Source: Lytechinus pictus (lineage: Eukaryota). From it: 64,000 bases of DNA. A model generated the notes under the pieces. It was not told the DNA's origin and ran no database searches. It saw nothing but the letters and a program-made list of their open reading frames with translations. Shown here in pieces: positions 10,201 to 64,000 of the stretch; the stretch's first letter is position 1; every line of letters starts with the position of its first letter. Made by a program: the position numbers and the translations under genes. Location of the stretch: contig NC_087254.1 in NCBI RefSeq assembly GCF_037042905.1, positions 35,278,001 to 35,342,000 of the forward strand, given 5' to 3'.

Positions 10201-13200
10201 TCATGAACCAGGCATACATTACTGTCAAGTTGGATGGACTGCTATCGTCAAACAACATTGTGAAAAGTGTGTATGAAGCGCAAGTTGTACATATACAGCT
10301 ACATGTATGTGTATGGAGATTCTCACACCTAAAGCCTTGAGATAATTTGACAACGAAATAAATACAATACACTATTTTCATACAAATACCAATCAATACC
10401 AGTATTGTATCCCCTTCATTTGCATATCAAAGGAGAATAGTCTGTTCTCACATCGACTGGATGTCATTGTAAAAAAAAAAATGTTGTTCTTGGTTTGTGC
10501 ATGTCAGAGATTAAGTCTTGTACACAGCGATTGCACTTATACTCTTCTATTTCTGTTTACATTAATTCATGTATGCTTTGCAAATACTTCTTCATGTTTC
10601 ACCCTTGAATATAAGACTGTTTAGTTGGCTTGGTCTGTTGTAAGTTTCTTTGCTACTTTTAGGCTTGGTCGATCAAAGTTTGAGTGGAAACCTTTATGAA
10701 CCAGGGACCTTGGAAGTATGATGAAAAGGATATTAAGCCACGCTCTGGTAGCCCAGATCTCTTTTATTTCATGAAAAGCTGTCTATTGATTTCACATACC
10801 AGCACAATAATAATTCTTACATGTATTGGAGGGTTTTATTTTTTTCAACAAGCTGTCCTGTTTGCCTACCAGAAGAGTATCTGTGTAATCTTAAAAGCAT
10901 GTACATTTGCTCATACATGTATTCATGTACATTGTAGCTTCTATTTGGGATGCAGATACATTAATGGAAGTCGTAAAGTGAATAGGCCTATTTAAAAGTT
11001 TTGCATTATCTTAGGATACTTATTGGATCAGTAAAAGCGGCATTGTGGATCTGACCTGAGTGATTGGAAACTGACAAGAGTTTAAAAGGAATAATCAGCT
11101 TTTATCATTCCATCAAGATCATACTGGATTTGTCTTAGAGCCTGCACCATCACATTTTTATTATGAAAAGAACATTGTATCAGAAGAATGGACATTAGAA
11201 TGTGTTTGCAAAGTTTCCACAAACATTATTGAATTTGAAGATACCTGAATGGGAGAACAGTTATCACATACTTCAGGTTTGAAGTAATTCATTTGCTTGA
11301 TGGAACTTGTTTCTAGCACTTTTAGCAATGGAGAATGCATCCGTGAGATAGCTGCTTCATTATTCACTAAAGAAAAACTTTTAAAAAGGAACAGAGAACC
11401 AATAAATATTTCCATTAAATACATTATTTTATTAGAGACGATATGCCAGTGGAAGTTATAAAGACCCCAGAAGGATTCATGGCCTGTGAAGATAAGCTGT
11501 AAGTTAATAAAAAACATTTTAGTACCCTTTCGTTGAGCAGGGTACTTTAATATATTTTTTATGCGCAGGGAGCCCGTCCTACAGGACTTATTATGGTATC
11601 ACGTTCGGTGTCCGTCTGTCTGTCTACTTGTTAACTTTTCTTTGTAAACGTGATAACTTCAGTTTAACTTAACCTAGGCTCATATAATTTGGTGTGTATG
11701 ATACTAGCATGGATCCCAGGAAGCCTATTGATTTTGAGGTCAAAGATCAAGTTCACAGTGACATGTTTTCCTTGTAAACGCAATAACTTTAGTTTAACTT
11801 AACCTAGGCTCATATAATTTGGTGCGTATGATACTAGCATGGATCCCAGGAAGCCTATCGATTTGGAGGTCAAAAGGTCAAAGGTGAAGTCTCCACCTTC
11901 CACTTTTCTTGCTTGACCAATACATGTTCTCCATTTTCCGCGTTACAGGCGGGCGTATTATTTGCTCACCTTAATAGCGACACTCTTGTTAACGATATAC
12001 TTTAGATGTATTATTTGCAAATATAGAGTTTGAAAGTTTTTACATGTAGTGCTCTTGATATTTTGACCGTTCTAGATTGGATTGTATTTTCTTTGATATT
12101 TTGGTTTTAGGGATCTTGAAATTGATTTTATTTGACTTTAAAAGATTAATGTTCCTTCTTTTCTCTAAATAGTCAAATTTGTACATGTGAAAAGATGTTT
12201 TGGTTTCCTTGTTGCTGATTAAAGGATAAATTTATTGTAAAAATAGGATAATTTTATTGTAAAAAAAGAAAAAAAATGATGAAAAATATTTCCAAAGGTT
12301 TATATAGTGCATAATATTTGACAGAATCTCTATGCGCTTTACATAAAAGTAGTTTAGTCTAATACTAATAAACTTTAAATAAAAAAAAACATGAATGAAA
12401 AACTACATGTAACAAAAACTTTGCAACATACCGTACCTTTTAAACAAAACAATCTAACGTGAGAACAAACTACGGTATGTCTTTAAGAAGTACAAGTGAT
12501 GGCCCTCAGATGATTAGGCAATTTATTCCAGGTACAGTACAGGTGCTGCTAACAAAAAGCAAGGAGCTTCCAAGGCACGATCCCCAAACGAACATGTTTT
12601 AGACATTGGCGCAATTGATAAATTCTGGTTAGAAGAGCGGAGATTTTTATTGCGGGACACATCCAGATATCAGATCAGACAGATATAATGAATCAACTTT
12701 TCAGTGGTCTTTTTACACAAGTAGTTCTGAATTTTTGCAATTCTTCTCAATGAACACATTGTTGTTTTAGTTGAAGGTGTTGAACTGTTGATCCATGTGA
12801 AAGCCCAGATTGTGTGCTTTAGTTGTCTCATGTACATCCACCCCGTCTGTTTCAATACAAGCTGGTGTTAAAGCAGAATTAATCCTAGATGAAACATGAA
12901 TCACTTCAGTCTTCTGTGGGTTGATTTTCAAACTATTTCTTCGGGCCAAAGGCAGGACTTCAGCAAATCCTGCTTGTAGCATTCAGTAGATCATGTTTGA
13001 GAAAAATCCATCAAAGAATAAAAAAAGTTATTAGAATTTGAATTATTTGATTTGTGACGTCATATGCCAGCAACTTTTCTACATATCATTTGGTTAAATA
13101 TCAATGAAATGTCATTTTCTCAGAAAATCGAAAATTTTACTGTATCTCTAGTATATCAATACACAAATTATTTCACACCCGTTCCTAAAAAGAAAAAAAA

Positions 13201-16200
13201 GAAAGAAAAATAGGTCATGAACCATTAAAAAAATGAAATTTATATGCATTTTATATTAACTTATGGGCCATATGAAATCAGTTGATTAATTGCTAGTATT
13301 TGCTACCGTATGGTCCTGCCAGTTTGTAAATTTTAACTCTCCCTGTTTGAGTAAGTTTCCGTTATTCAACAAATTCAACAGACTATAGTATTTGTTGAAA
13401 ACCATGTCTATCGCTCCAGAGCTCTGGTATGCATTGTGTGTACTTGACAAACATTTATTCTTTTGAGGTTTTGTTTGTGTAGGTCAAGTTTAGCGTTTTC
13501 TGCGCCAGCTGGATGGTACATGTAGTACATGTGATTTGCAAATGAGATCATGGAGTATTAAAACTACAAGTGGATCTGCCTTACTCGAATCTCTAGGAAC
13601 GATGGAAATCTGTTCGAGAAATACTAAATTTGACTTGAAAATGATATCAACATATATGTATTGTATTAGGCTTGGGCAATTTCCAGCTTTCCCAGAGTTG
13701 GTTCTGACCTAAGGCTTCGGTTCTGAGAGGAGTCGACTCCACTAGTGCATTACCAGATTACCGGTACACATTAAGCTCTTTTCATCCCCTCTTTGTATGT
13801 CCGAGGGTGACCAGATTTTGGCAGTTGAAATACGGGACACTTCCTTCGAGGTCAATATACGGGATGCAGGACAAATTTGTGAAATAGGGACTTTCCCTTA
13901 AAGTACGGATTGTCTGGTCACCCTGGTATATCCGTCTCTCTCTTTCTCTCTCAAATCTCAATGTTTTTGGTTTCTTTTTTTGTTATTGAAACATTGAAAG
14001 TGTGTATCTGACCAATTTCTGGAGAAGTCTGCTTGCACTCCCACTTTATGACACAAGTGGTCTGGAGAGTAGTTCTAACGCAACTGCACAGTAATTGACA
14101 GTATAAACTAAATTTCTTGAGCCTAGAATTCTCAACTTCATTGTAAGCCTTGATTGTACATCAACAGGGCTTTTCTATGTTATAAAAAATAGAATCAGTT
14201 CTCTTGTACATTGAATCCCTTGGGCTCGAGATATGGGCCTTGAAACTATGGGGGTCGACTCCTCGACTCTGGTGACAAGAATGTGGCAAACTCGATTATT
14301 CGGCTGTGATGCCCAAGCCTATATTGTACATTCTGGTCAAATCATGATACAGTACAGTATCTTTGAATGAAAGAAGCAATTGTTTGATATCATGTTTACC
14401 ATGCACAATAGAGTGTTACGATATGTACGGCCTAGATCTTATCTTTATTCTTTAACTAGTTTAATAGTAACTGATCGCAGTGCTGTTGCCATTGCGAAAA
14501 ATGATGCAAATTTTAGGGGATACTGAACCTATACTCCTAGCTTCTATAGACATGTCATCCACTGTACCAAGGTAACTTATCTTTTGATATTCTAGATTTC
14601 TCTTTCCTTTAAATATTGTGGAGGCCTACATTGGCCAACATTTACATTTGACATTTTTGGAGGGAGAGAGAGAGAGAGAGGGGTATAGGAAGGCTTGGAA
14701 ATTGTTTCATCAAGTTGTTAGTTTCTTTGTTCACCTGTGGAAGTTGTACTGTCAAGAGATCACCTTAGAATTGTGTTATAATTGTGCACATGTACATGTA
14801 CAGTATATTTAGAACAGAAGTTGTTTGGGGATTAAAAGCTTGAGAAAAGCCTCAGCCTACCTCTGTACACTGCTTTGCTGTACTTGCATCAAGATACATG
14901 TATGCATGTTGCTTGATGATCAGTCTGTATTAAGAAATTCCTACTTTGAAGCCCATGGCCCGAATCAGTCATGGAATTATGTGCAATAAAGAACCAGGCC
15001 ATTTGGATCGGAACTGGTTATTTTACATCAACATTTATAGCTGTTTAACATTGCTGTACATGTACTTTAGTCTGTAGCACAGCTAGTACAGTACATGTAT
15101 CATATTCATTCTAAAGGTGTTTTTGTTTATTTGTGTTTAATGTAAGAAATTATGCATGCTCATAATGTTACGCTGTGAACTTGAACAGGTAACGGGAAGA
15201 GCTTACCATGAAAGCGCTAATGTATAACGGGTTGAAATATCAAGTGGTAACAATAGAAATGATTGCCTTGGGCTATCCTAGGTTAATGATGGATGACCCC
15301 ATTGGATATTTGCATTCTTTGGATTGTTTACAATAGTTGTTTGTCTGCATTCCTCAAATATTGTGATTTATAAAGTGTGCAATTCTGTATGCACTATATG
15401 CACAGGTATATATGCATGACTCTCCGTGGTTTAAATGAGGATTTTTTATTTTCTGCTTGTATCGTTTTCTCATATATCTGCCCATCTGTTTGTTACATTT
15501 GTAAATCTGTGGGTAGCAAAGAAATCTGTATCTCATTCAGTGTGTGTTGTTTAGTCCCCCCCCCCCCACAAAATGGTTTCTTGGTATATGCCCCCTCCCT
15601 CTTCCCTCGATATACCTCTGTTGAAAGTGCCAGTGGTTTCAAAACCATATTCGTGGTTATTTTCCATACATACATCAGAATTAGATAATGTATGAATTTC
15701 TTCCACAAAGTATACCCTTGAATAATACAAGTAGCGTACACTCCTCACAACAAGATACATGCACATGACAACCTCATGGTAAGCTGCAGATGTTAAAGAG
15801 TAGAATCAGCAGAGCAACAGTTTCATGGACTTTAATATTTTTGGTAATAAAGGCAGGCCAAGGTATGCTAAAGTCCACAGAAAAAAAAATTAAATTGTTA
15901 AACTGCCATTTAGTTTTAAAACAGTTTAATCCTAAATTCCTTCCTTTACTATATTATCTTTTCAGGGGTATGGAGGCCATTCCAGGCACTGTCCACCTGG
16001 AGAAGGATAGTCAGAACCTCGTGGGCATCAGTATCGGTGGAGGGGCGCCACTCTGCCCCTGTTTGTACATCGTACAGGTGTTTGACAACACCCCTGCTGC
16101 TAAAAGCAAACTCCTCAACGCTGGAGACGAGATAGTAGGGGTCAATAAGAAGTCTGTGAAGGGAAGAACTAAAGTGGAAGTGGCTCGGATGATCCAAGCT

Positions 16201-19200
16201 CTCAAGGTATGTATACTGCAGAATACAGGGTAAATTACAACTTAGTCGACACCCACTTTTAATACCTACTTTCCATTTGGTCCCACAAGGTTTAATTCTA
16301 GTTTGTCTGCTACCAGTTTGTCTACAAACAAGTACTACTTAGCCAGTTTAATATTTTAAGTAATGGAATAGGTTATACCCATTTCATCTAATAATATCCA
16401 CTTGGTCTAACAATAGTCTATTGTAGATAACTGTTAAACCAAATATTTTATGACAAAATGTGAAAATATACCAAATTTGTAACAGACCAAGTTGGTTTAG
16501 CCATGATGGTGTAAGACTATCTGAGAACTAGACCTTTGGCTACTAGGCCAGTGAATGCTAGCTGTAAGGAATACAGTATTGTACAGTATTCCCTAGTATT
16601 TTTTTTCAATTTATGAAAGGTGCTGAAATATATTTTAAATAAAAAGATATAATTAGTCTCTGCACAAAAACAAAAAAAGGTTTGAGCATGGCTTTGTTTT
16701 GCAAAGCAAAGAAATGTAAAACTTGTGATGAAAAATATGTTCTCTGTGTACAACCCCTTCCCCATTTATTCATCATCTTTCTCTCATTAAAATGTACATA
16801 TTGATACATGTAGGCCTATATTTTCTCTTGGAGAATGCGAATTACATTGTGATGTAAAAGATAATCTACATGCACTGTACCTTTACATGTACAGTTGACG
16901 TGTACCCACTTTTATTCAGAACCAAACCTTGAGCATATGGTAAAAGATGAATCTCTAAAATTGATTTATGCACAGTGCAACATCTCACTATCATTTGATA
17001 TTTATGGCCATCACAGAATCAGACAGCAAATACATGTAATTTTACTGCACTACCAGGGGTATATTTTATAAATGAAGCAATACAGTGCAACTTTTGTAAC
17101 CCATTGACCCCCCATTTGTCCTTGGAATATCTGCTCCCAACCACGGTCAAGTTCTGCAATTCACAATGATTTCTTGGGGAAGGTAACCTAAATGAATTCT
17201 GAATTCTATCATTCCTGTTAGTTTTGTACATGGACTACCCAATCCCAGTACTTTGGCAATGGGTTAATAATACACATGTATGTGCAAATGCAGGTTTCTT
17301 GATGCTCTACCTTAAGGAAGAGAGTAGAATCTAGATGCCATGGTACTTATTGCTACCTGTTTATGTCATTGCATCACTAAAAGGTCTTCATGACATACAT
17401 GTACAAGTACAGTATAGAGGACAATGTACATCACGACATTGGAATTATGTGTTATAGAAGTTGTGTTGGAATTAAGTTTCTTGCTGGGTATGAGAGCTAC
17501 ATGTATGCTGCAGAACACTGTGGGGGGGTAGTGTTTCTTAAAGTTGCAATTTAATTTCCTAGCGGTATGTTACACATCACTACATTGCTCTGATTATGCA
17601 ATAGCGGATGTGCACTAATGCTTTAAATTCCTTGAATTTGATCGGCTGAGAAGCACTATGGCAAGTGTCTGTAAAAACAGGACTTGTCTGATAAAATATC
17701 TGACAAGTCCTTTCATGAAACTCTCTCATCTAGAGCTGCAGGAAGTTTAATATTTGTACATCCAAACCAATGTTGCCAGATAAGAAATTTTAGAATGACT
17801 TTATGCATATTTTCTTTGATTTTTGATAGGGAGAGGTGATAATCAGCTATAACAGCCTCAAAGCAGACACCAAGGAAGGGAAAGGAATGGATATTGCTCT
17901 CAAGAAAGCCAAACATCGGATGGTGGAGAACATGAGTTCTTCAACTGCTGATGCCCTCGGTCTCAGTAGAGCTATTCTCTGTAATGGTAAGTTATACAGG
18001 GACATGGGGCCTGTACCACAAAGCTTAAAGGTCAAGTCCACCCCAGAAAAATGTTTATTTGAATAAATAGAGAAAAATCCATCTAGCAGAATCACTGAAA
18101 ATTTCATCAAAATCGGATGTAAAATAAGAAAGTTATGGCATTTTTAAGTTTCGCTTATTTTGTCACAAAACAGTGATATGCACAACTCAGTGACATGCAA
18201 ATGAGAGAGTCGATGATGTCACTCACTCACTATTTCTTTTGTTTTTTATTGTTTGAATTATACAATATTTCATTTTTTACAGATTTGACAATAAGGACCA
18301 ACTTGACTGAACCATATAGTATTAAACAATGCTAATTCCACATGTTCAGGAGGATTTTAATCGTTCTTTCACTTGACAATGAGGAGAAAATTAGATTATT
18401 TCATATTTCATATAATAAAATACAAAAGAAATAGTGAGTGGATGACGTCATCAGTCTCCTTATTTGCATACTGACCAGGATGTGCATATAACTGTTTTGT
18501 GAAATTAAGCAAAACTTTAAAATGTCATAACTTTCTTATTTTACATCCGATTTTTATGAAATTTTCAGGGTTATGCTTGTTGGATTTTTCTTTTTTTATT
18601 CAAATCCATTTTTTGTTGGGGTGGACTTGTCCTTTAATAGCAATGATCGTAGAACATTTTTCCACAATTGATTCCATTGAATACAATGTACAATCAATTG
18701 TGAAAATCAAGTGTACGATTAATCACGAATCTTTGTGTTACGAGACCCTGGATGGTGTTTCACAAAGCTGTTCTTAAAGTTACGCATGACTTTATGAACA
18801 GCCGGAACATGGGGCGTCAAGTCAGCTGCAACCTGTGCAAGAAAGGGTCCCTATTCATGGGTAAAGCCATGCATAACTTACAAACAGCTTTATGAAACAG
18901 CCCTTAGGCACCTATGGGGCCCACTATCTATTGTTGGGATCATATGACATGTATGTATAATTGCTCATTGAGCATGAAACCAAACGGTCACAACCTTGGC
19001 TAGTTTGAATCCTGATTTGAGGCTTTATTGATTCACCTAGAATACACTATAGTTCATACATGTATATTTTTATATGGATGGTTAATATCAACGTGAAGCC
19101 AAGTGTATATTTACTTGTACTGAAAGAGACCTGCATAATTTATTTGCACATTATGGTAAAGTCACCAGGTTTTACCCACCATTAGGTCAACTGCATTTTT

Positions 19201-29469: not shown

Positions 29470-29745
29470 AAAGATAAAATATTGAAGAACGAGGAGCAGA
29501 AGAAGAAGGAGGAGGACAAGAAGAAGAGGAGGGTGAAGAAGGAGTAGAAGAAGAATTGGGAGGAAGGATGAGGAGGAAAAATAAGAAGGAGCAGAAGAAG
29601 AGGAAGAAGATGGCGAAGGTAAAGGGGAGAAGAAGGAGGAGGAGAAGAAGAAAAAATAAGAAGTGGGAGAAGAAAAAGGAAAAGAAGATGAGGATGAGAA
29701 AGAAGAGAGAGAGAAATTGTCCGAAGAGATGGGGAAGAGAATGGG
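29470..29745. repeat. Degenerate (GAA/GGA)n purine tract
   Basis: Almost pure A/G low-complexity run. Confidence 0.9.
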
Positions 29746-59898: not shown

Positions 59899-61230
59899 AA
59901 GAACCTTTCCTTGGCATCTATTTTTTTTCTCCTCTGTGTTCACTCTGTAAATTATGGGAGGGTAAATGATGCACGTTTCTAGTCTGTGGTGTGTGAGTGT
60001 ATTATAGTGGATTGTGCCTACTCTCTCTCTCTTTATTATTTCTCTCTCTCCCCTCTCTCCTTCTCAATATTCAAATTTAATCTCTCTATCTCATTTTACT
60101 CTCACTCTTTTAATTTATCACCCACTCTTCCGTTCTTTCATCTCTCTCTATCGCCCACAACCACAGACAATAACACACACCCACTCTCGTATATTTTGAC
60201 AATCGGAGACTCATTTATCATCATCGCCGAAGTGAGGACGCGTGTCTGCGGAATATACACTCAAAATGTTTAATTAAATTCACTAGCCGGACTTATTATC
60301 GGGAACAACGTAAACATGGCTGGCTAACCGGGGACGCTTCCAGTCCCCTACACATACATCTTGAATTTAATTGTTCGAACGGGATCTTTATCAAAATCAT
60401 GCATTTACTATATTACATGGTTTGAAATGAGATGAAGAATTGGATTGGCATGGTTATGTGGATCGGGAACGTCCTCGGTTGATGGCAAAACATAAGAAAA
60501 TGTCCCCCGAAGAAGGTCATTATACAAAGTCAAGCACACACATGCACCCTTACACCCCATCCGCTCGTCCGCACCCTCTCCTAACCTTCCTTTCTCGCTC
60601 GTTCTTCCTTCAATTACCATTTCACGGGCAAGAAAATCTTCCCTTTTCTCTATCATTCGTTTGGCCAAAAACCATTTCCTCATGATTACTTTCAATCCAC
60701 GACCTCTCTTCTGCTTCCCCGCGTCGCCCAGTCATGGTGAAACAGAGTGCCCTTGAACTATTGTAGAAACCAATTAGTATGCAGGTGTTTCCTGAGTTTA
60801 TAGTCCTTTAGCTTGACCAAGGAAAGGATATTGCACTGCCGTATACTAAGAAGTTATAATGGTAACAGGTGGCATTCAAAGTCGTATAACTAGTCTTCAT
60901 AAATAAAATATTAGGATAGATTTTTTTTAAATAAACAAAAAATCATCATTCTTTGTATAAGCATAGCTCTATGGTATAAGTATCTAGTTTTAAATACGTG
61001 AAACGGTACCATCAATGCTAAACTCATTTTCATGAATCCATGATTGATAAAAAGACAATGTAGATGCTTCTTCGAGGCATGGCAAGGCATGTGGACGATC
61101 AACATGATCAAAAGACAACCCCCACCGTAGCACAACTACTAACACAATGATATACACAGCTAGTTGAAGCTATTGATGCTACAGCTATCTAAAACCTTAT
61201 ATATCTTTTGAATATAGTTTTCTGAACCTA

Positions 61231-63299
61231 ACGCTACAGTCACACCGACTAAACCGACTCCAGACCGATCAAAGCTATTACATTATTTCCATCATACACC
61301 ATCGGTCTATTTGGATTCGGTTTCGGTTACAGTCACACCATCGAAACCGACTCCAGACCGATCAAAGCTATTACATTATTTCCATCATACACCATCGGTC
61401 TATTTGGATTCGGTTTCGGTTACAGTCACACCATCGAAACCGACTCCAGACCGATCAAAGCTATTACATTATTTCCATCATACACCATCGGTCTATTTGG
61501 ATTCGGTTTCGGTTACAGTCACACCATCGAAACCGACTCCAGACCGATCAAAGCTATTACATTATTTCCATCATACACCATCGGTCTATTTGGATTCGGT
61601 TTCGGTTACAGTCACACCATCGAAACCGACTCCAGACCGATCAAAGCTATTACATTATTTCCATCATACACCATCGGTCTATTTGGATTCGGTTTCGGTT
61701 ACAGTCACACCATCGAAACCGACTCCAGACCGATCAAAGCTATTACATTATTTCCATCATACACCATCGGTCTATTTGGATTCGGTTTCGGTTACAGTCA
61801 CACCATCGAAACCGACTCCAGACCGATCAAAGCTATTACATTATTTCCATCATACACCATCGGTCTATTTGGATTCGGTTTCGGTTACAGTCACACCATC
61901 GAAACCGACTCCAGACCGATCAAAGCTATTACATTATTTCCATCATACACCATCGGTCTATTTGGATTCGGTTTCGGTTACAGTCACACCATCGAAACCG
62001 ACTCCAGACCGATCAAAGCTATTACATTATTTCCAATTATACACCATCGGTCTATTTGGATTCGGTTTCGGTTACAGTCACACCAATGAAACCGACTCCA
62101 GACCGATCAAAGCTATTACATTATTTCCAATGAGGAATCATCGGTCGGTTTGGATTCGGTTTCGGTTACAGTCACACCAACGAAACAGACTCCAGACCGA
62201 TCAAAGCTATTACATTATTTCCATCATACACCATCGGTCTATTTGGATTCGGTTTCGGTTACAGTCACACCAACGAAACCGACTCCAGACCGATCAAAGC
62301 TATTACATTATTTCCATCATACACCATCGGTCTATTTGGATTCGGTTTCGGTTACAGTCACACCATCGAAACCGACTCCAGACCGATCAAAGCTATTACA
62401 TTATTTCCATCATACACCATCGGTCTGTTTGGATTCGGTTTCGGTTACAGTCATACCAACGAAACCGACTCTAGACCGATCAAAGCTATTACATTATTTC
62501 CATCATACACCATCGGTCTATTTGGATTCGGTTTCGGTTACAGTCACACCATCGAAACCGACTCCAGACCGATCAAAGCTATTACATTATTTCCATCATA
62601 CACCATCGGTCTATTTGGATTCGGTTTCGGTTACAGTCACACCAACGAAACCGACTCCAGACCGATCAAAGCTATTACATTATTTCCATCATACACCATC
62701 GGTCTGTTTGGATTCGGTTTCGGTTACAGTCACACCATCGAAACCGACTCCAGACCGATCAAAGCTATTACATTATTTCCATCATACACCATCGGTCTAT
62801 TTGGATTCGGTTTCGGTTACAGTCACACCAACGAAACCGACTCCAGACCGATCAAAGCTATTACATTATTTCCATCATACACCATCGGTCTGTTTGGATT
62901 CGGTTTCGGTTACAGTCACACCATCAAAACCGACTCCAGACCGATTAAAGCTATTACATTATTTCCATCATACACCATCGATCGGTTTGGATTCGGTTTC
63001 GGTTACAGTCACACCAACGAAACCGACTCCAGACCGATCAAAACTATTACATTATTTCCAATTATACACCATCGGTCGGTTTGGATTCGGTTTCGGTTAC
63101 AGTCACACCACGAAACCGACTCCAGACCGATCAAAACTATTACATTATTTCCAATTATACACCATCGGTCCGTTTGGAGTCGGTTTCGGTTAAAGTCACA
63201 CCACGAAACCGACTCCAGACCGATCAAAACTATTACATTATTCCCAATGACATACCATCGGTCGGTTTGGATCCGGTTTCTTTCGGGTGACTGTCGCGT
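61231..63299 (+). repeat. 93-bp tandem array (~22 units) bounded by MITE-type terminal inverted repeats
   Basis: Unit acagtcacaccatcgaaaccgactccagaccgatcaaagctattacattatttccatcatacaccatcggtctatttggattcggtttcggtt (starts 61236, 61329...); ends ta|acgctacagtcacaccga ... tcgggtgactgtcgcgt|ta. Confidence 0.95.
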
Positions 63300-64000
63300 T
63301 ATGTTGCACATTTTTGTTAACACAAACTTTTCAATTTAGCTTTGTAAAGACCTAAAGCTTAAAAGTGTCCCTCACTCTCAATAGCTATCCTTTTGTTCAG
63401 ATCGGGGTTCAGATATCTAATATTGAAGAAGTCATTTGATTTAGATTCACCATCCAACGTCTAAAATGTCATGGCGTGTGACTCATTTGACTCTCTTTGG
63501 TTTTCTATAGTAAGGCGACACCGCTCGCATATTTTCCATCAATCTTAAAAGCCAATTCTTTCCAATCAAAAAAGAAAATAAACCAGCTACAAGCAATCTC
63601 ATATCCGGCCTAGCAGTCGATATTCCATCGACTTCTCAATCAGCGAACTAAATCAAATGAACCTTTCAAAAATAAAAAAGAAAGCCATTTGAACTCCCCT
63701 ATCCATCATTCTGGAAACGTTTCAAGACACGCCCGGATAGGGGATAAGATGGGGCATTGAGAAAGGCTTACAAATTTGTATACATTTTAGATTAAAATAT
63801 CAAGACGGGAATGGAAGTGATTATTAACTTTTATTATATTGATTAACATCTCAAAGTTGCTAAAATATGCCATTCTTCTTCATGGACAAACTACAAATTT
63901 TATAGTATAATATAGTATATTATTTATTTTGCGTATAAAAAACACACCCAAAAATGCAAAACGGATGGATAGCCCATATTCAGGTTAGTTGACATGACTA

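What the first reader, a model, noticed from the sequence alone, without database searches (positions are those of the whole stretch)
61231..63299. Satellite born inside a MITE: 93-bp array enclosed by terminal inverted repeats
Seen: ~22 head-to-tail 93-bp units sit between inverted termini (taacgctacagtcacaccga / tcgggtgactgtcgcgtta). Each unit is itself an imperfect palindrome (aaaccgactccagaccgat vs atcggtctatttggattcggttt) and contains part of the left TIR. Inference: nearly the whole body of a ~115-bp MITE was tandemly amplified in place while both ends were retained, so the 2-kb array could still be mobilisable. This looks like a snapshot of a TE-to-satellite transition.
Basis: partly seen in the sequence, partly recalled or inferred. 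Interest (0 to 1): 0.7.

Follow-up and report, generated by a model that had tools for sequence, protein, structure and literature searches.

The report
Tandem-repeat MITE array in sea urchin
This 2-kb block of 22 head-to-tail 93-bp repeats is one expanded copy of an old miniature-transposon family of this sea-urchin genome; its multi-unit form spread to about 50 sites before growing here, a well-known route from transposon to satellite-like DNA.

Summary
TRF finds 22.0 copies of a 93-bp unit at 61235-63280 (96% match). Inverted termini bound the array, every unit is a hairpin, and every unit carries the left terminal motif.

The "born here" reading is only partly right.
- Single-unit elements exist on all chromosomes: 96 have exact 10-nt tips, mostly 102 bp, against 0 controls. 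The arm motif has 3,187 hits.
- About 50 other loci hold arrays of 2-15 units with the same termini.
- All 13 arrays read share one unit-to-unit junction, GGTTTCG-GTTA-CAGTCACACC (151 exact genome-wide). The multi-unit form therefore arose once and moved as a whole. Half of the array loci lie on one arm of contig C9.
- Growth did happen at this locus. The 22 window units share 8 states that are rare or absent elsewhere, 9 units are identical, and part of the array is a 186-bp dimer repeat.
- Two other junction types (106-bp arrays on C5 and C18) show that the family became tandem at least three times.
- The insertion also sits at the same site in a related organism, whose flanks are about 90% identical.

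The family is old, so present mobility is doubtful. Superfamily (TA versus TWA duplication) and the autonomous partner are unresolved.

This is a new member of a known kind (Xstir, miDNA4, DTC84). The scan holds only this same stretch as a prior note.

The parts
61229..61231 (.). TAA flank next to the left terminus. It is either TA target duplication plus the first TIR base, or a TWA duplication.
   Evidence: Flank consensus T-W-A-T-G-C-T-A before CAGTCACACC over 94 element ends; window sequence.
61232..61268 (+). Left terminal inverted repeat: tip CGCTA, then CAGTCACACC and the arm.
   Evidence: 3 of 37 mismatches to the family consensus; inverted with 63262-63298.
61235..63280 (+). Array of 22 units of 93-94 bp. 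Each unit holds the left tip, left arm, loop and right arm, and lacks the right tip.
   Evidence: TRF; register print; unit list.
61319..61339 (+). First unit-to-unit junction, GGTTTCG-GTTA-CAGTCACACC. The same junction is found in arrays on other contigs.
   Evidence: C10:35339319-35339339 equals window 61319-61339.
61328..61978 (+). Seven consecutive identical units (units 2-8). Units 15 and 17 are identical to them as well.
62530..62900 (+). 186-bp dimer higher-order repeat, with alternating AAC/ATC and CTG/CTA variants.
   Evidence: Identity at lag 186 is 1.000 against 0.978 at lag 93; units 12-18.
62995..63280 (+). Right-edge units 20-22. They are the most diverged from the rest of the array and lack several of the window-specific states shared by 17-22 of the 22 units.
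   Evidence: lag-93 identity is only 0.78 here.
63262..63298 (-). Right terminal inverted repeat, including the only copy of the right tip GGGTGACTG-TCGCG.
   Evidence: 7 of 37 mismatches to the consensus.
63299..63301 (.). TTA flank next to the right terminus.

Best explanation
The region is one copy of an old, non-coding, TIR-bounded miniature DNA transposon family of this sea-urchin genome, in its tandem-repeat-containing form. The basic element is about 112 bp. It has a 5-nt tip TGCTA, the core CAGTCACACC, arms of about 34 nt that pair with each other, and a loop of about 34 nt. Step 1 (inferred): two copies came to lie tail to head. Their abutting tips formed a perfect palindrome (tip, 2-3 nt spacer, tip). 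This was resolved by deleting the right tip, the spacer and the first tip base. A 3-nt GTT microhomology sits at the break. The result is the junction GGTTTCG-GTTA-CAGTCACACC and a 94-bp unit. Step 2 (shown by shared junction, complete outer termini and unrelated flanks): the oligomer, still carrying one left and one right tip, was moved in trans to about 50 loci. Half of them lie on C9 between 11.7 and 25.3 Mb, as local hopping would give. Step 3 (shown): at this locus unequal exchange or replication slippage between hairpin-forming units raised the copy number to 22 and homogenised the units. Ancestral-like units were left at the right edge, and a 186-bp dimer repeat formed. Step 4 (partly shown): the termini have decayed, so the array is now most likely an immobile seed of satellite-like DNA.
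For: Array and termini. Monomers: 96 exact matches to tip-N70-100-tip, 0 in the control, on all large contigs; consensus. Family size: 3,187 arm-motif hits, control 0. Other arrays: units 81-89% identical to the window's; family termini visible at most array ends. Shared junction: identical in 13 arrays; 151 exact matches, control 0, 67 of the first 100 on C9. Unrelated flanks: among 116 ends only one duplicated pair (L063/L064) shares flanks up to the element. In-place growth: identity within large arrays is about 0.95 against 0.863 between arrays, and 8 window-specific states are shared by 17-22 of 22 units but found in 0-40 of 161 other units. Precursor-like tail-to-head pairs with a 3-nt spacer: C19:14077286 and C18:13987781. 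Independent junction types that also keep only one tip intact: C5:45451399-45451830 and C18:16.80-16.87 Mb. Age: both element borders are present on contigs of a second organism whose flanks are about 90% identical (records 12, 13, 20, 21, 23, 30, 31). Non-coding: units elsewhere are 94 bp, and there are no Rfam hits near threshold. The same model was proposed for Xstir (Hikosaka and Kawahara 2004, as summarised in PMC12628747).
Against: No target-site duplication could be established. Of 8 elements with T-W-A on both sides, 5 have complementary triplets (TAA...TTA) and 3 have identical ones (read by eye). This fits TA plus a variable first base about as well as it fits TWA. No autonomous partner and no empty site were found, so transposition is inferred from structure and distribution, not shown. 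A junction recreated many times by a deterministic mechanism would mimic common descent, but the shared GTTA tip variant and the existence of other junction types argue against it. The internal copy number of the window array rests on the assembly alone. The automatic end test found both termini in only 16 of 33 arrays. Part of that shortfall is mis-set array limits and part is real truncation.
Confidence: 0.8

Rival explanations
1. One reading: a single 115-bp MITE inserted here and its body was first made tandem at this locus, so the junction is a local invention.
For: All 22 units share window-specific states and 9 are identical, so most of the copy number arose here.
Against: The same junction, with the same GTTA tip variant, is present in all 13 arrays read on C7, C9, C13 and C19. 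It has 151 exact matches genome-wide.
Confidence: 0.08
2. The arrays are short satellite-like repeats spread by segmental duplication, circular-DNA reinsertion or recombination, and the inverted ends are only edge units, not transposon termini.
For: No target duplication or transposase partner was demonstrated. Some arrays are truncated at one end.
Against: The right tip GTTGGTGTGACTGTAGCA occurs only at array ends and is absent from internal units, yet it matches the tip of free monomers. Flanks are unrelated between loci. Monomers outnumber arrays and are dispersed.
Confidence: 0.07
3. It is a foldback element, or a Helitron/Helentron-borne array as in oysters and Drosophila.
For: This genome has foldback elements with satellite arms (earlier scan notes). 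Helentrons carry arrays in other invertebrates (PMC7492417).
Against: The units are all in direct orientation, not in two inverted blocks. The ends are inverted repeats of each other, not the asymmetric Helitron ends. The monomer is a plain 112-bp hairpin element.
Confidence: 0.03
4. It is an assembly artefact or a coding or RNA-gene repeat.
For: 93 = 31 x 3 gives stop-free frames of 387 and 347 aa across the array.
Against: Both borders are confirmed by independent contigs. The variant units occur in a non-periodic order. The family unit elsewhere is 94 bp, which breaks any frame. Rfam matches score 19-25 bits against thresholds of 84-180.
Confidence: 0.02

Closest known systems
Xstir / Xmix MITE and its tandem arrays in Xenopus (Hikosaka and Kawahara 2004; summarised in PMC12628747 and PMC9659126)
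   Same: Three forms coexist: free MITE, tandem array, and array bounded by MITE ends. The repeat unit derives from the MITE's own sequence. The proposed origin is two nearby copies forming a stem-loop whose loop is excised.
   Different: Different host phylum and an unrelated sequence. Here the unit is almost the whole MITE including one complete tip. At least three junction types are seen. Arrays stay short, at most 22 units.
miDNA4, a Tc1/mariner MITE carrying a satellite in Xenopus tropicalis (Scalvenzi and Pollet 2014; via PMC12628747, PMC9659126)
   Same: Copy number of the internal repeat varies between insertions. Arrays are homogenised locally. TIR decay is proposed as the route to a free satellite.
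   Different: [quoted passage not shown] Here the repeat is the MITE body itself.
DTC84 / pearl-type tandem-repeat-containing MITEs of bivalves (PMC3879986)
   Same: A short non-autonomous element serves as a cassette around 1-5 or more core repeats. A palindrome near each unit junction is suggested as the hotspot for length change.
   Different: DTC84 has distinct flanking modules, a microsatellite and an ordered set of core variants. Its core is not the element's own inverted-repeat body.
Tetris foldback transposon and the TIR-220 satellite of Drosophila virilis (PMC4079207)
   Same: Transposon terminal sequence supplies the monomer of an emerging satellite.
   Different: Tetris repeats lie in two inverted arms. 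Here a single direct array lies between short termini.

Membership tests
MITE (miniature inverted-repeat transposable element) | Short (under about 800 bp), with no coding capacity | tested here: met
   The monomer core is 102 bp, about 112 bp with tips. It has no ORF. The stop-free frames in the array are an effect of 93 = 31 x 3.
MITE (miniature inverted-repeat transposable element) | Terminal inverted repeats | tested here: met
   The arms pair over about 34 nt. A monomer folds at -29.5 kcal/mol, z = -6.7. Consensus.
MITE (miniature inverted-repeat transposable element) | High copy number, dispersed, with unrelated flanks | tested here: met
   3,187 arm hits and 96 perfect-tip monomers on all large contigs.
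MITE (miniature inverted-repeat transposable element) | Target-site duplication of fixed length | tested here: inconclusive
   The flank consensus is T-W-A next to TGC. Paired ends are split 3 identical to 5 complementary. TA and TWA both remain possible. Only 3 perfect 22-nt tips exist.
MITE (miniature inverted-repeat transposable element) | Related autonomous element supplying the transposase | not testable with these tools
   The genome has at least 150 DDE_Tnp_4 (PIF/Harbinger) matches, many with open 446-aa frames.
PIF/Harbinger (Tourist-like) superfamily | 3-bp TWA target duplication, identical on both sides | tested here: inconclusive
   T-W-A is enriched at -8..-6 and +6..+8, and tail-to-head pairs are spaced by 3 nt. 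However, the window, L013, L069, L075 and L077 have TAA on one side and TTA on the other.
Tc1/mariner (Stowaway-like) superfamily | TA target duplication | tested here: inconclusive
   TA followed by ATGC, and GCAT followed by TA, fits the complementary pairs and the weaker T at -8. It needs a variable first TIR base.
Tandem-repeat-containing MITE (Xstir, miDNA4, DTC84 kind) | TIR-bounded element whose internal tandem repeat varies in copy number between insertions | tested here: met
   2 to 22 units between family termini at 33 loci read.
Satellite DNA in the classical sense | Long homogeneous arrays (many kb to Mb) forming a sizeable genome fraction | tested here: not met
   There are only 151 exact junctions genome-wide and the largest array is this 2-kb one. 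Collapsed arrays in the assembly cannot be excluded.
Foldback element | Two long inverted arms built of repeats | tested here: not met
   All units are in direct orientation.

The most novel reading that the evidence does not exclude
The family's hairpin architecture makes tandem formation a recurrent, sequence-determined outcome. Whenever two copies abut, the tip-spacer-tip palindrome is resolved by loss of one tip. This happened at least three times with different breakpoints. The resulting oligomers stay transposable and hop locally (the C9 and C19 clusters). One genome would then preserve every stage from monomer to locally homogenised array with a higher-order repeat, giving a testable general rule for how MITEs seed satellites.
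Probability: 0.3. Interest if true: 0.5.

Novelty: new member of a known kind. Interest (0 to 1): 0.35.

Why it matters
The route from transposon to satellite is well documented in frogs, bivalves and flies. The searches made here found no echinoderm case, and the library of papers is incomplete. The value of this family is that one assembly holds the whole series:
- free monomers;
- tail-to-head pairs with a 3-nt spacer;
- three independent junction types;
- about 50 transposed oligomers clustered on one chromosome arm;
- one 22-unit array with identical units and a dimer higher-order repeat.

This allows direct tests of two points: whether palindrome resolution at abutting termini creates the first junction, and whether arrays remain mobile. 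For annotation, the two long open frames across the array should not be called genes.

Tried and rejected
- **Target-duplication tests on 44 monomers and about 30 arrays:** no k-mer duplication stood out, because the ends are too decayed.
- **Search for young copies:** only 3 ends have a perfect 22-nt tip.
- **Empty-site search among all loci held:** the only flank homologies were one duplicated pair and unrelated dispersed repeats that stop short of the element.
- **Autonomous partner:** the Pfam DDE_Tnp_4 scan found many Harbinger transposases, but no loci could be cut out. Long ORFs in the loci held are host genes: galactosyltransferase, BTB.
- **Reads:** all runs are contigs. They break inside the array, so they give no copy number. 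The joints that skip the array have short sides (23-42 nt) at 85% likeness and probably come from other family members. I did not take them as empty or monomeric alleles.
- **Rfam:** only sub-threshold miRNA-like hairpin matches.
- **Earlier-findings search by sequence:** blank, which means nothing here.

Full report
**1. What is there**

TRF finds one strong array in the window: 61235-63280, period 93, 22.0 copies, 96% matches. Printed in register, the units are 93-94 bp.
- Units 2-8 are identical, and so are units 15 and 17.
- Between 62530 and 62900 the identity at lag 186 is 1.000 against 0.978 at lag 93. This is a dimer higher-order repeat.
- The three rightmost units are the most diverged from the rest. 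They lack several of the window-specific states.

The array is bounded by inverted termini. I place the element at 61232-63298, with TAA before it and TTA after it. A 34-nt terminal motif occurs 20 times in the window, all inside the array, with none expected by chance. Each unit folds as a hairpin (-16.1 kcal/mol, z = -5.4). The stretch spanning a unit junction folds just as well (-17.5 kcal/mol, z = -6.3), so the array is a continuous chain of alternating arms.

**2. The family**

The genome is a sea urchin's according to earlier scan notes. I did not test that. It has 811.7 Mb, and the window is C10:35278001-35342000.

*Monomers.* The pattern of tip, 70-100 nt, then tip has 96 exact matches and 0 controls. 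Most are 102 bp, on all large contigs.
- The consensus of 44 copies shows arms that pair over about 34 nt around a loop of about 34 nt.
- A monomer folds at -29.5 kcal/mol, z = -6.7.
- The arm motif, with up to 2 mismatches, has 3,187 hits and 0 controls.

*Element ends.* Flanks of 94 ends give the consensus T-W-A-T-G-C-T-A directly before CAGTCACACC. Composition is flat further out. The mirror image appears at the other end. The same consensus appears in the loose ends of hundreds of contigs of a second organism (table 7). The element therefore ends about 5-6 nt outside the CAG...CTG core.

**3. Arrays elsewhere, and the junction**

A two-unit query finds arrays on C1, C7, C9, C11, C13, C14, C16, C19 and C21, with units 81-89% identical to the window's. 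I read 33 arrays of 2 to 22 units.
- Most show the family tips at their ends, and their flanks are unrelated.
- In all 13 arrays printed unit by unit, the unit-to-unit junction is the same: the right arm up to GGTTTCG, then GTTA, then CAGTCACACC. GTTA is a minority variant of the left tip.
- The 21-nt junction has 151 exact matches and 0 controls.

An identical breakpoint with an identical variant is best explained by one origin. Complete outer termini and unrelated flanks are best explained by transposition of the whole oligomer.

About 50 array loci were seen. Some 25 lie on C9 between 11.7 and 25.3 Mb, and 7 lie on C19 between 2.4 and 4.0 Mb. Monomers, by contrast, are spread evenly. This looks like local hopping of the array-bearing subfamily.

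**4. What happened at this locus**

Mean identity within the large arrays is about 0.95, against 0.863 between arrays. The window's units share 8 states held by 17-22 of the 22 units but by only 0-40 of 161 units elsewhere. So nearly all 22 copies descend from one unit variant, in place. The least homogenised units sit at the right edge, as unequal exchange would leave them.

The termini differ from the consensus at 3/37 positions (left) and 7/37 positions (right). They are far more decayed than the identical inner units, so the expansion is much younger than the insertion.

*Reads.* In a run of the window's own organism, contigs match 60300-61280 and 63213-63567 without a difference. Both borders are therefore real (records 1 and 8). 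In three runs of a second organism from three studies, contigs about 90% identical to the flanks run into the left tip (to 61240/61241). Other contigs run from the last unit across the right terminus into the flank (records 12, 13, 20, 21, 23, 30, 31). The insertion thus predates the split of the two organisms. Its copy number in the second organism is unknown.

**5. How the first junction may have formed (inferred)**

Two copies lying tail to head would place right tip, spacer and left tip together as a perfect palindrome.
- Such pairs exist. C19:14077286 reads CAGCA-CAA-TGCT and C18:13987781 reads ACGCA-TTT-TGCTA.
- Deleting the right tip, the spacer and the first tip base between two GTT triplets gives exactly the observed junction.
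- Two further array types kept a different part. On C5:45451399-45451830 the 106-bp unit holds a full tip, TTA, 14 nt of filler and a truncated tip. On C18:16.80-16.87 Mb the 106-bp unit holds a full right tip, TGA and a left arm without its tip.

The family therefore became tandem at least three times, each time keeping only one of the two abutting tips intact. This is essentially the stem-loop excision model proposed for Xstir (PMC12628747).

**6. What is not settled**

*Superfamily.* T-W-A next to TGC suggests a PIF/Harbinger TWA duplication, and the genome is rich in Harbinger transposases. Among 8 elements with T-W-A on both sides, however, 5 have TAA on one side and TTA on the other. That fits a TA duplication plus a variable first base at least as well.

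*Partner and empty site.* No empty site and no autonomous partner were found.

*Age.* The family is old: only 3 ends keep a perfect 22-nt tip.

**7. Rivals**

- *Foldback or Helitron-type carriers* do not fit the direct orientation of the units or the symmetric ends.
- *A coding reading* fails because the family unit is 94 bp.
- *RNA families:* Rfam gives only sub-threshold hairpin matches.
- *Assembly artefact* is unlikely given the confirmed borders and the non-periodic order of variants. Long reads are still needed for the copy number.

**8. Comparison and verdict**

MITEs that carry or generate tandem arrays are established: Xstir and miDNA4 in Xenopus, DTC84 and pearl in bivalves, and Tetris in Drosophila (PMC12628747, PMC9659126, PMC3879986, PMC4079207). 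This is a new member of that kind in an echinoderm. It has an unusually complete series of stages and a repeat unit that is almost the whole MITE.

The claim that the tandem state was born at this locus is not. Interest is moderate.

Noticed in passing
G000 C9:11.7-25.3 Mb and C19:2.4-4.0 Mb: About 25 of roughly 50 array loci lie on one stretch of C9, and 7 lie on C19 between 2.4 and 4.0 Mb. Free monomers are evenly spread. Local hopping or a special chromatin region could explain this.
   Followed up: partly
G000 C18:16799681-16873103: 106-bp arrays of the same family with a different junction (full right tip, TGA, then left arm without tip). They recur at about 5.1-kb intervals, as if embedded in a larger tandem macro-repeat.
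   Followed up: no
G000 C5:45451337-45451830: A third array type with a 106-bp period. Each unit keeps a full tip, TTA and 14 nt of filler before a truncated tip.
   Followed up: partly
G000 C3:7167713-7168175: A cluster of same-strand arm motifs spaced 44, 88 and 267 nt apart. This may be yet another rearranged or arm-only repeat form.
   Followed up: no
L041:1473, L092:1085 and 1477, L093:305 and 966: Another repeat ends in GTAAGGTGTGCGGTGGCC. Read inward, its tip (GGCCACCGCACACC) resembles this MITE's tip. It directly abuts the MITE's T-W-A flank at three loci. It may be a related element using the same kind of target.
   Followed up: partly
L035:1610-1730, L075, L013, L025; L055:402-651, L051, L077, L034, L022: Two other dispersed repeats lie within 7-450 nt of several family members. 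One has a motif of about 16 nt repeated internally. The other is at least 235 bp and has its own inverted ends. Their nearness is probably chance among abundant repeats.
   Followed up: partly
window 61311-62474 and 62150-63193, + strand: Stop-free frames of 387 and 347 aa run through the array only because 93 is a multiple of 3. They should not be annotated as genes.
   Followed up: yes
window 15790-16233, + strand: This ORF carries a PDZ domain (Pfam E = 1.2e-9). It is probably an exon of a host gene.
   Followed up: partly
window 29484-29706 and 11636-11874: A GAA/AGA-rich low-complexity repeat lies inside a 215-aa frame on the minus strand. A 130-bp repeat of 1.8 copies was also reported by TRF.
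   Followed up: no
G000, many contigs: There are at least 150 PIF/Harbinger transposase (DDE_Tnp_4) matches. Dozens have near-identical scores and open frames of about 446 aa, which suggests a young and possibly active Harbinger family.
   Followed up: no
L083:1378-2400 (-) and L012:1-663 (+): Host gene exons (galactosyltransferase; BTB/POZ) lie within 1-2 kb of family arrays, so the arrays sit in gene-bearing euchromatin.
   Followed up: partly
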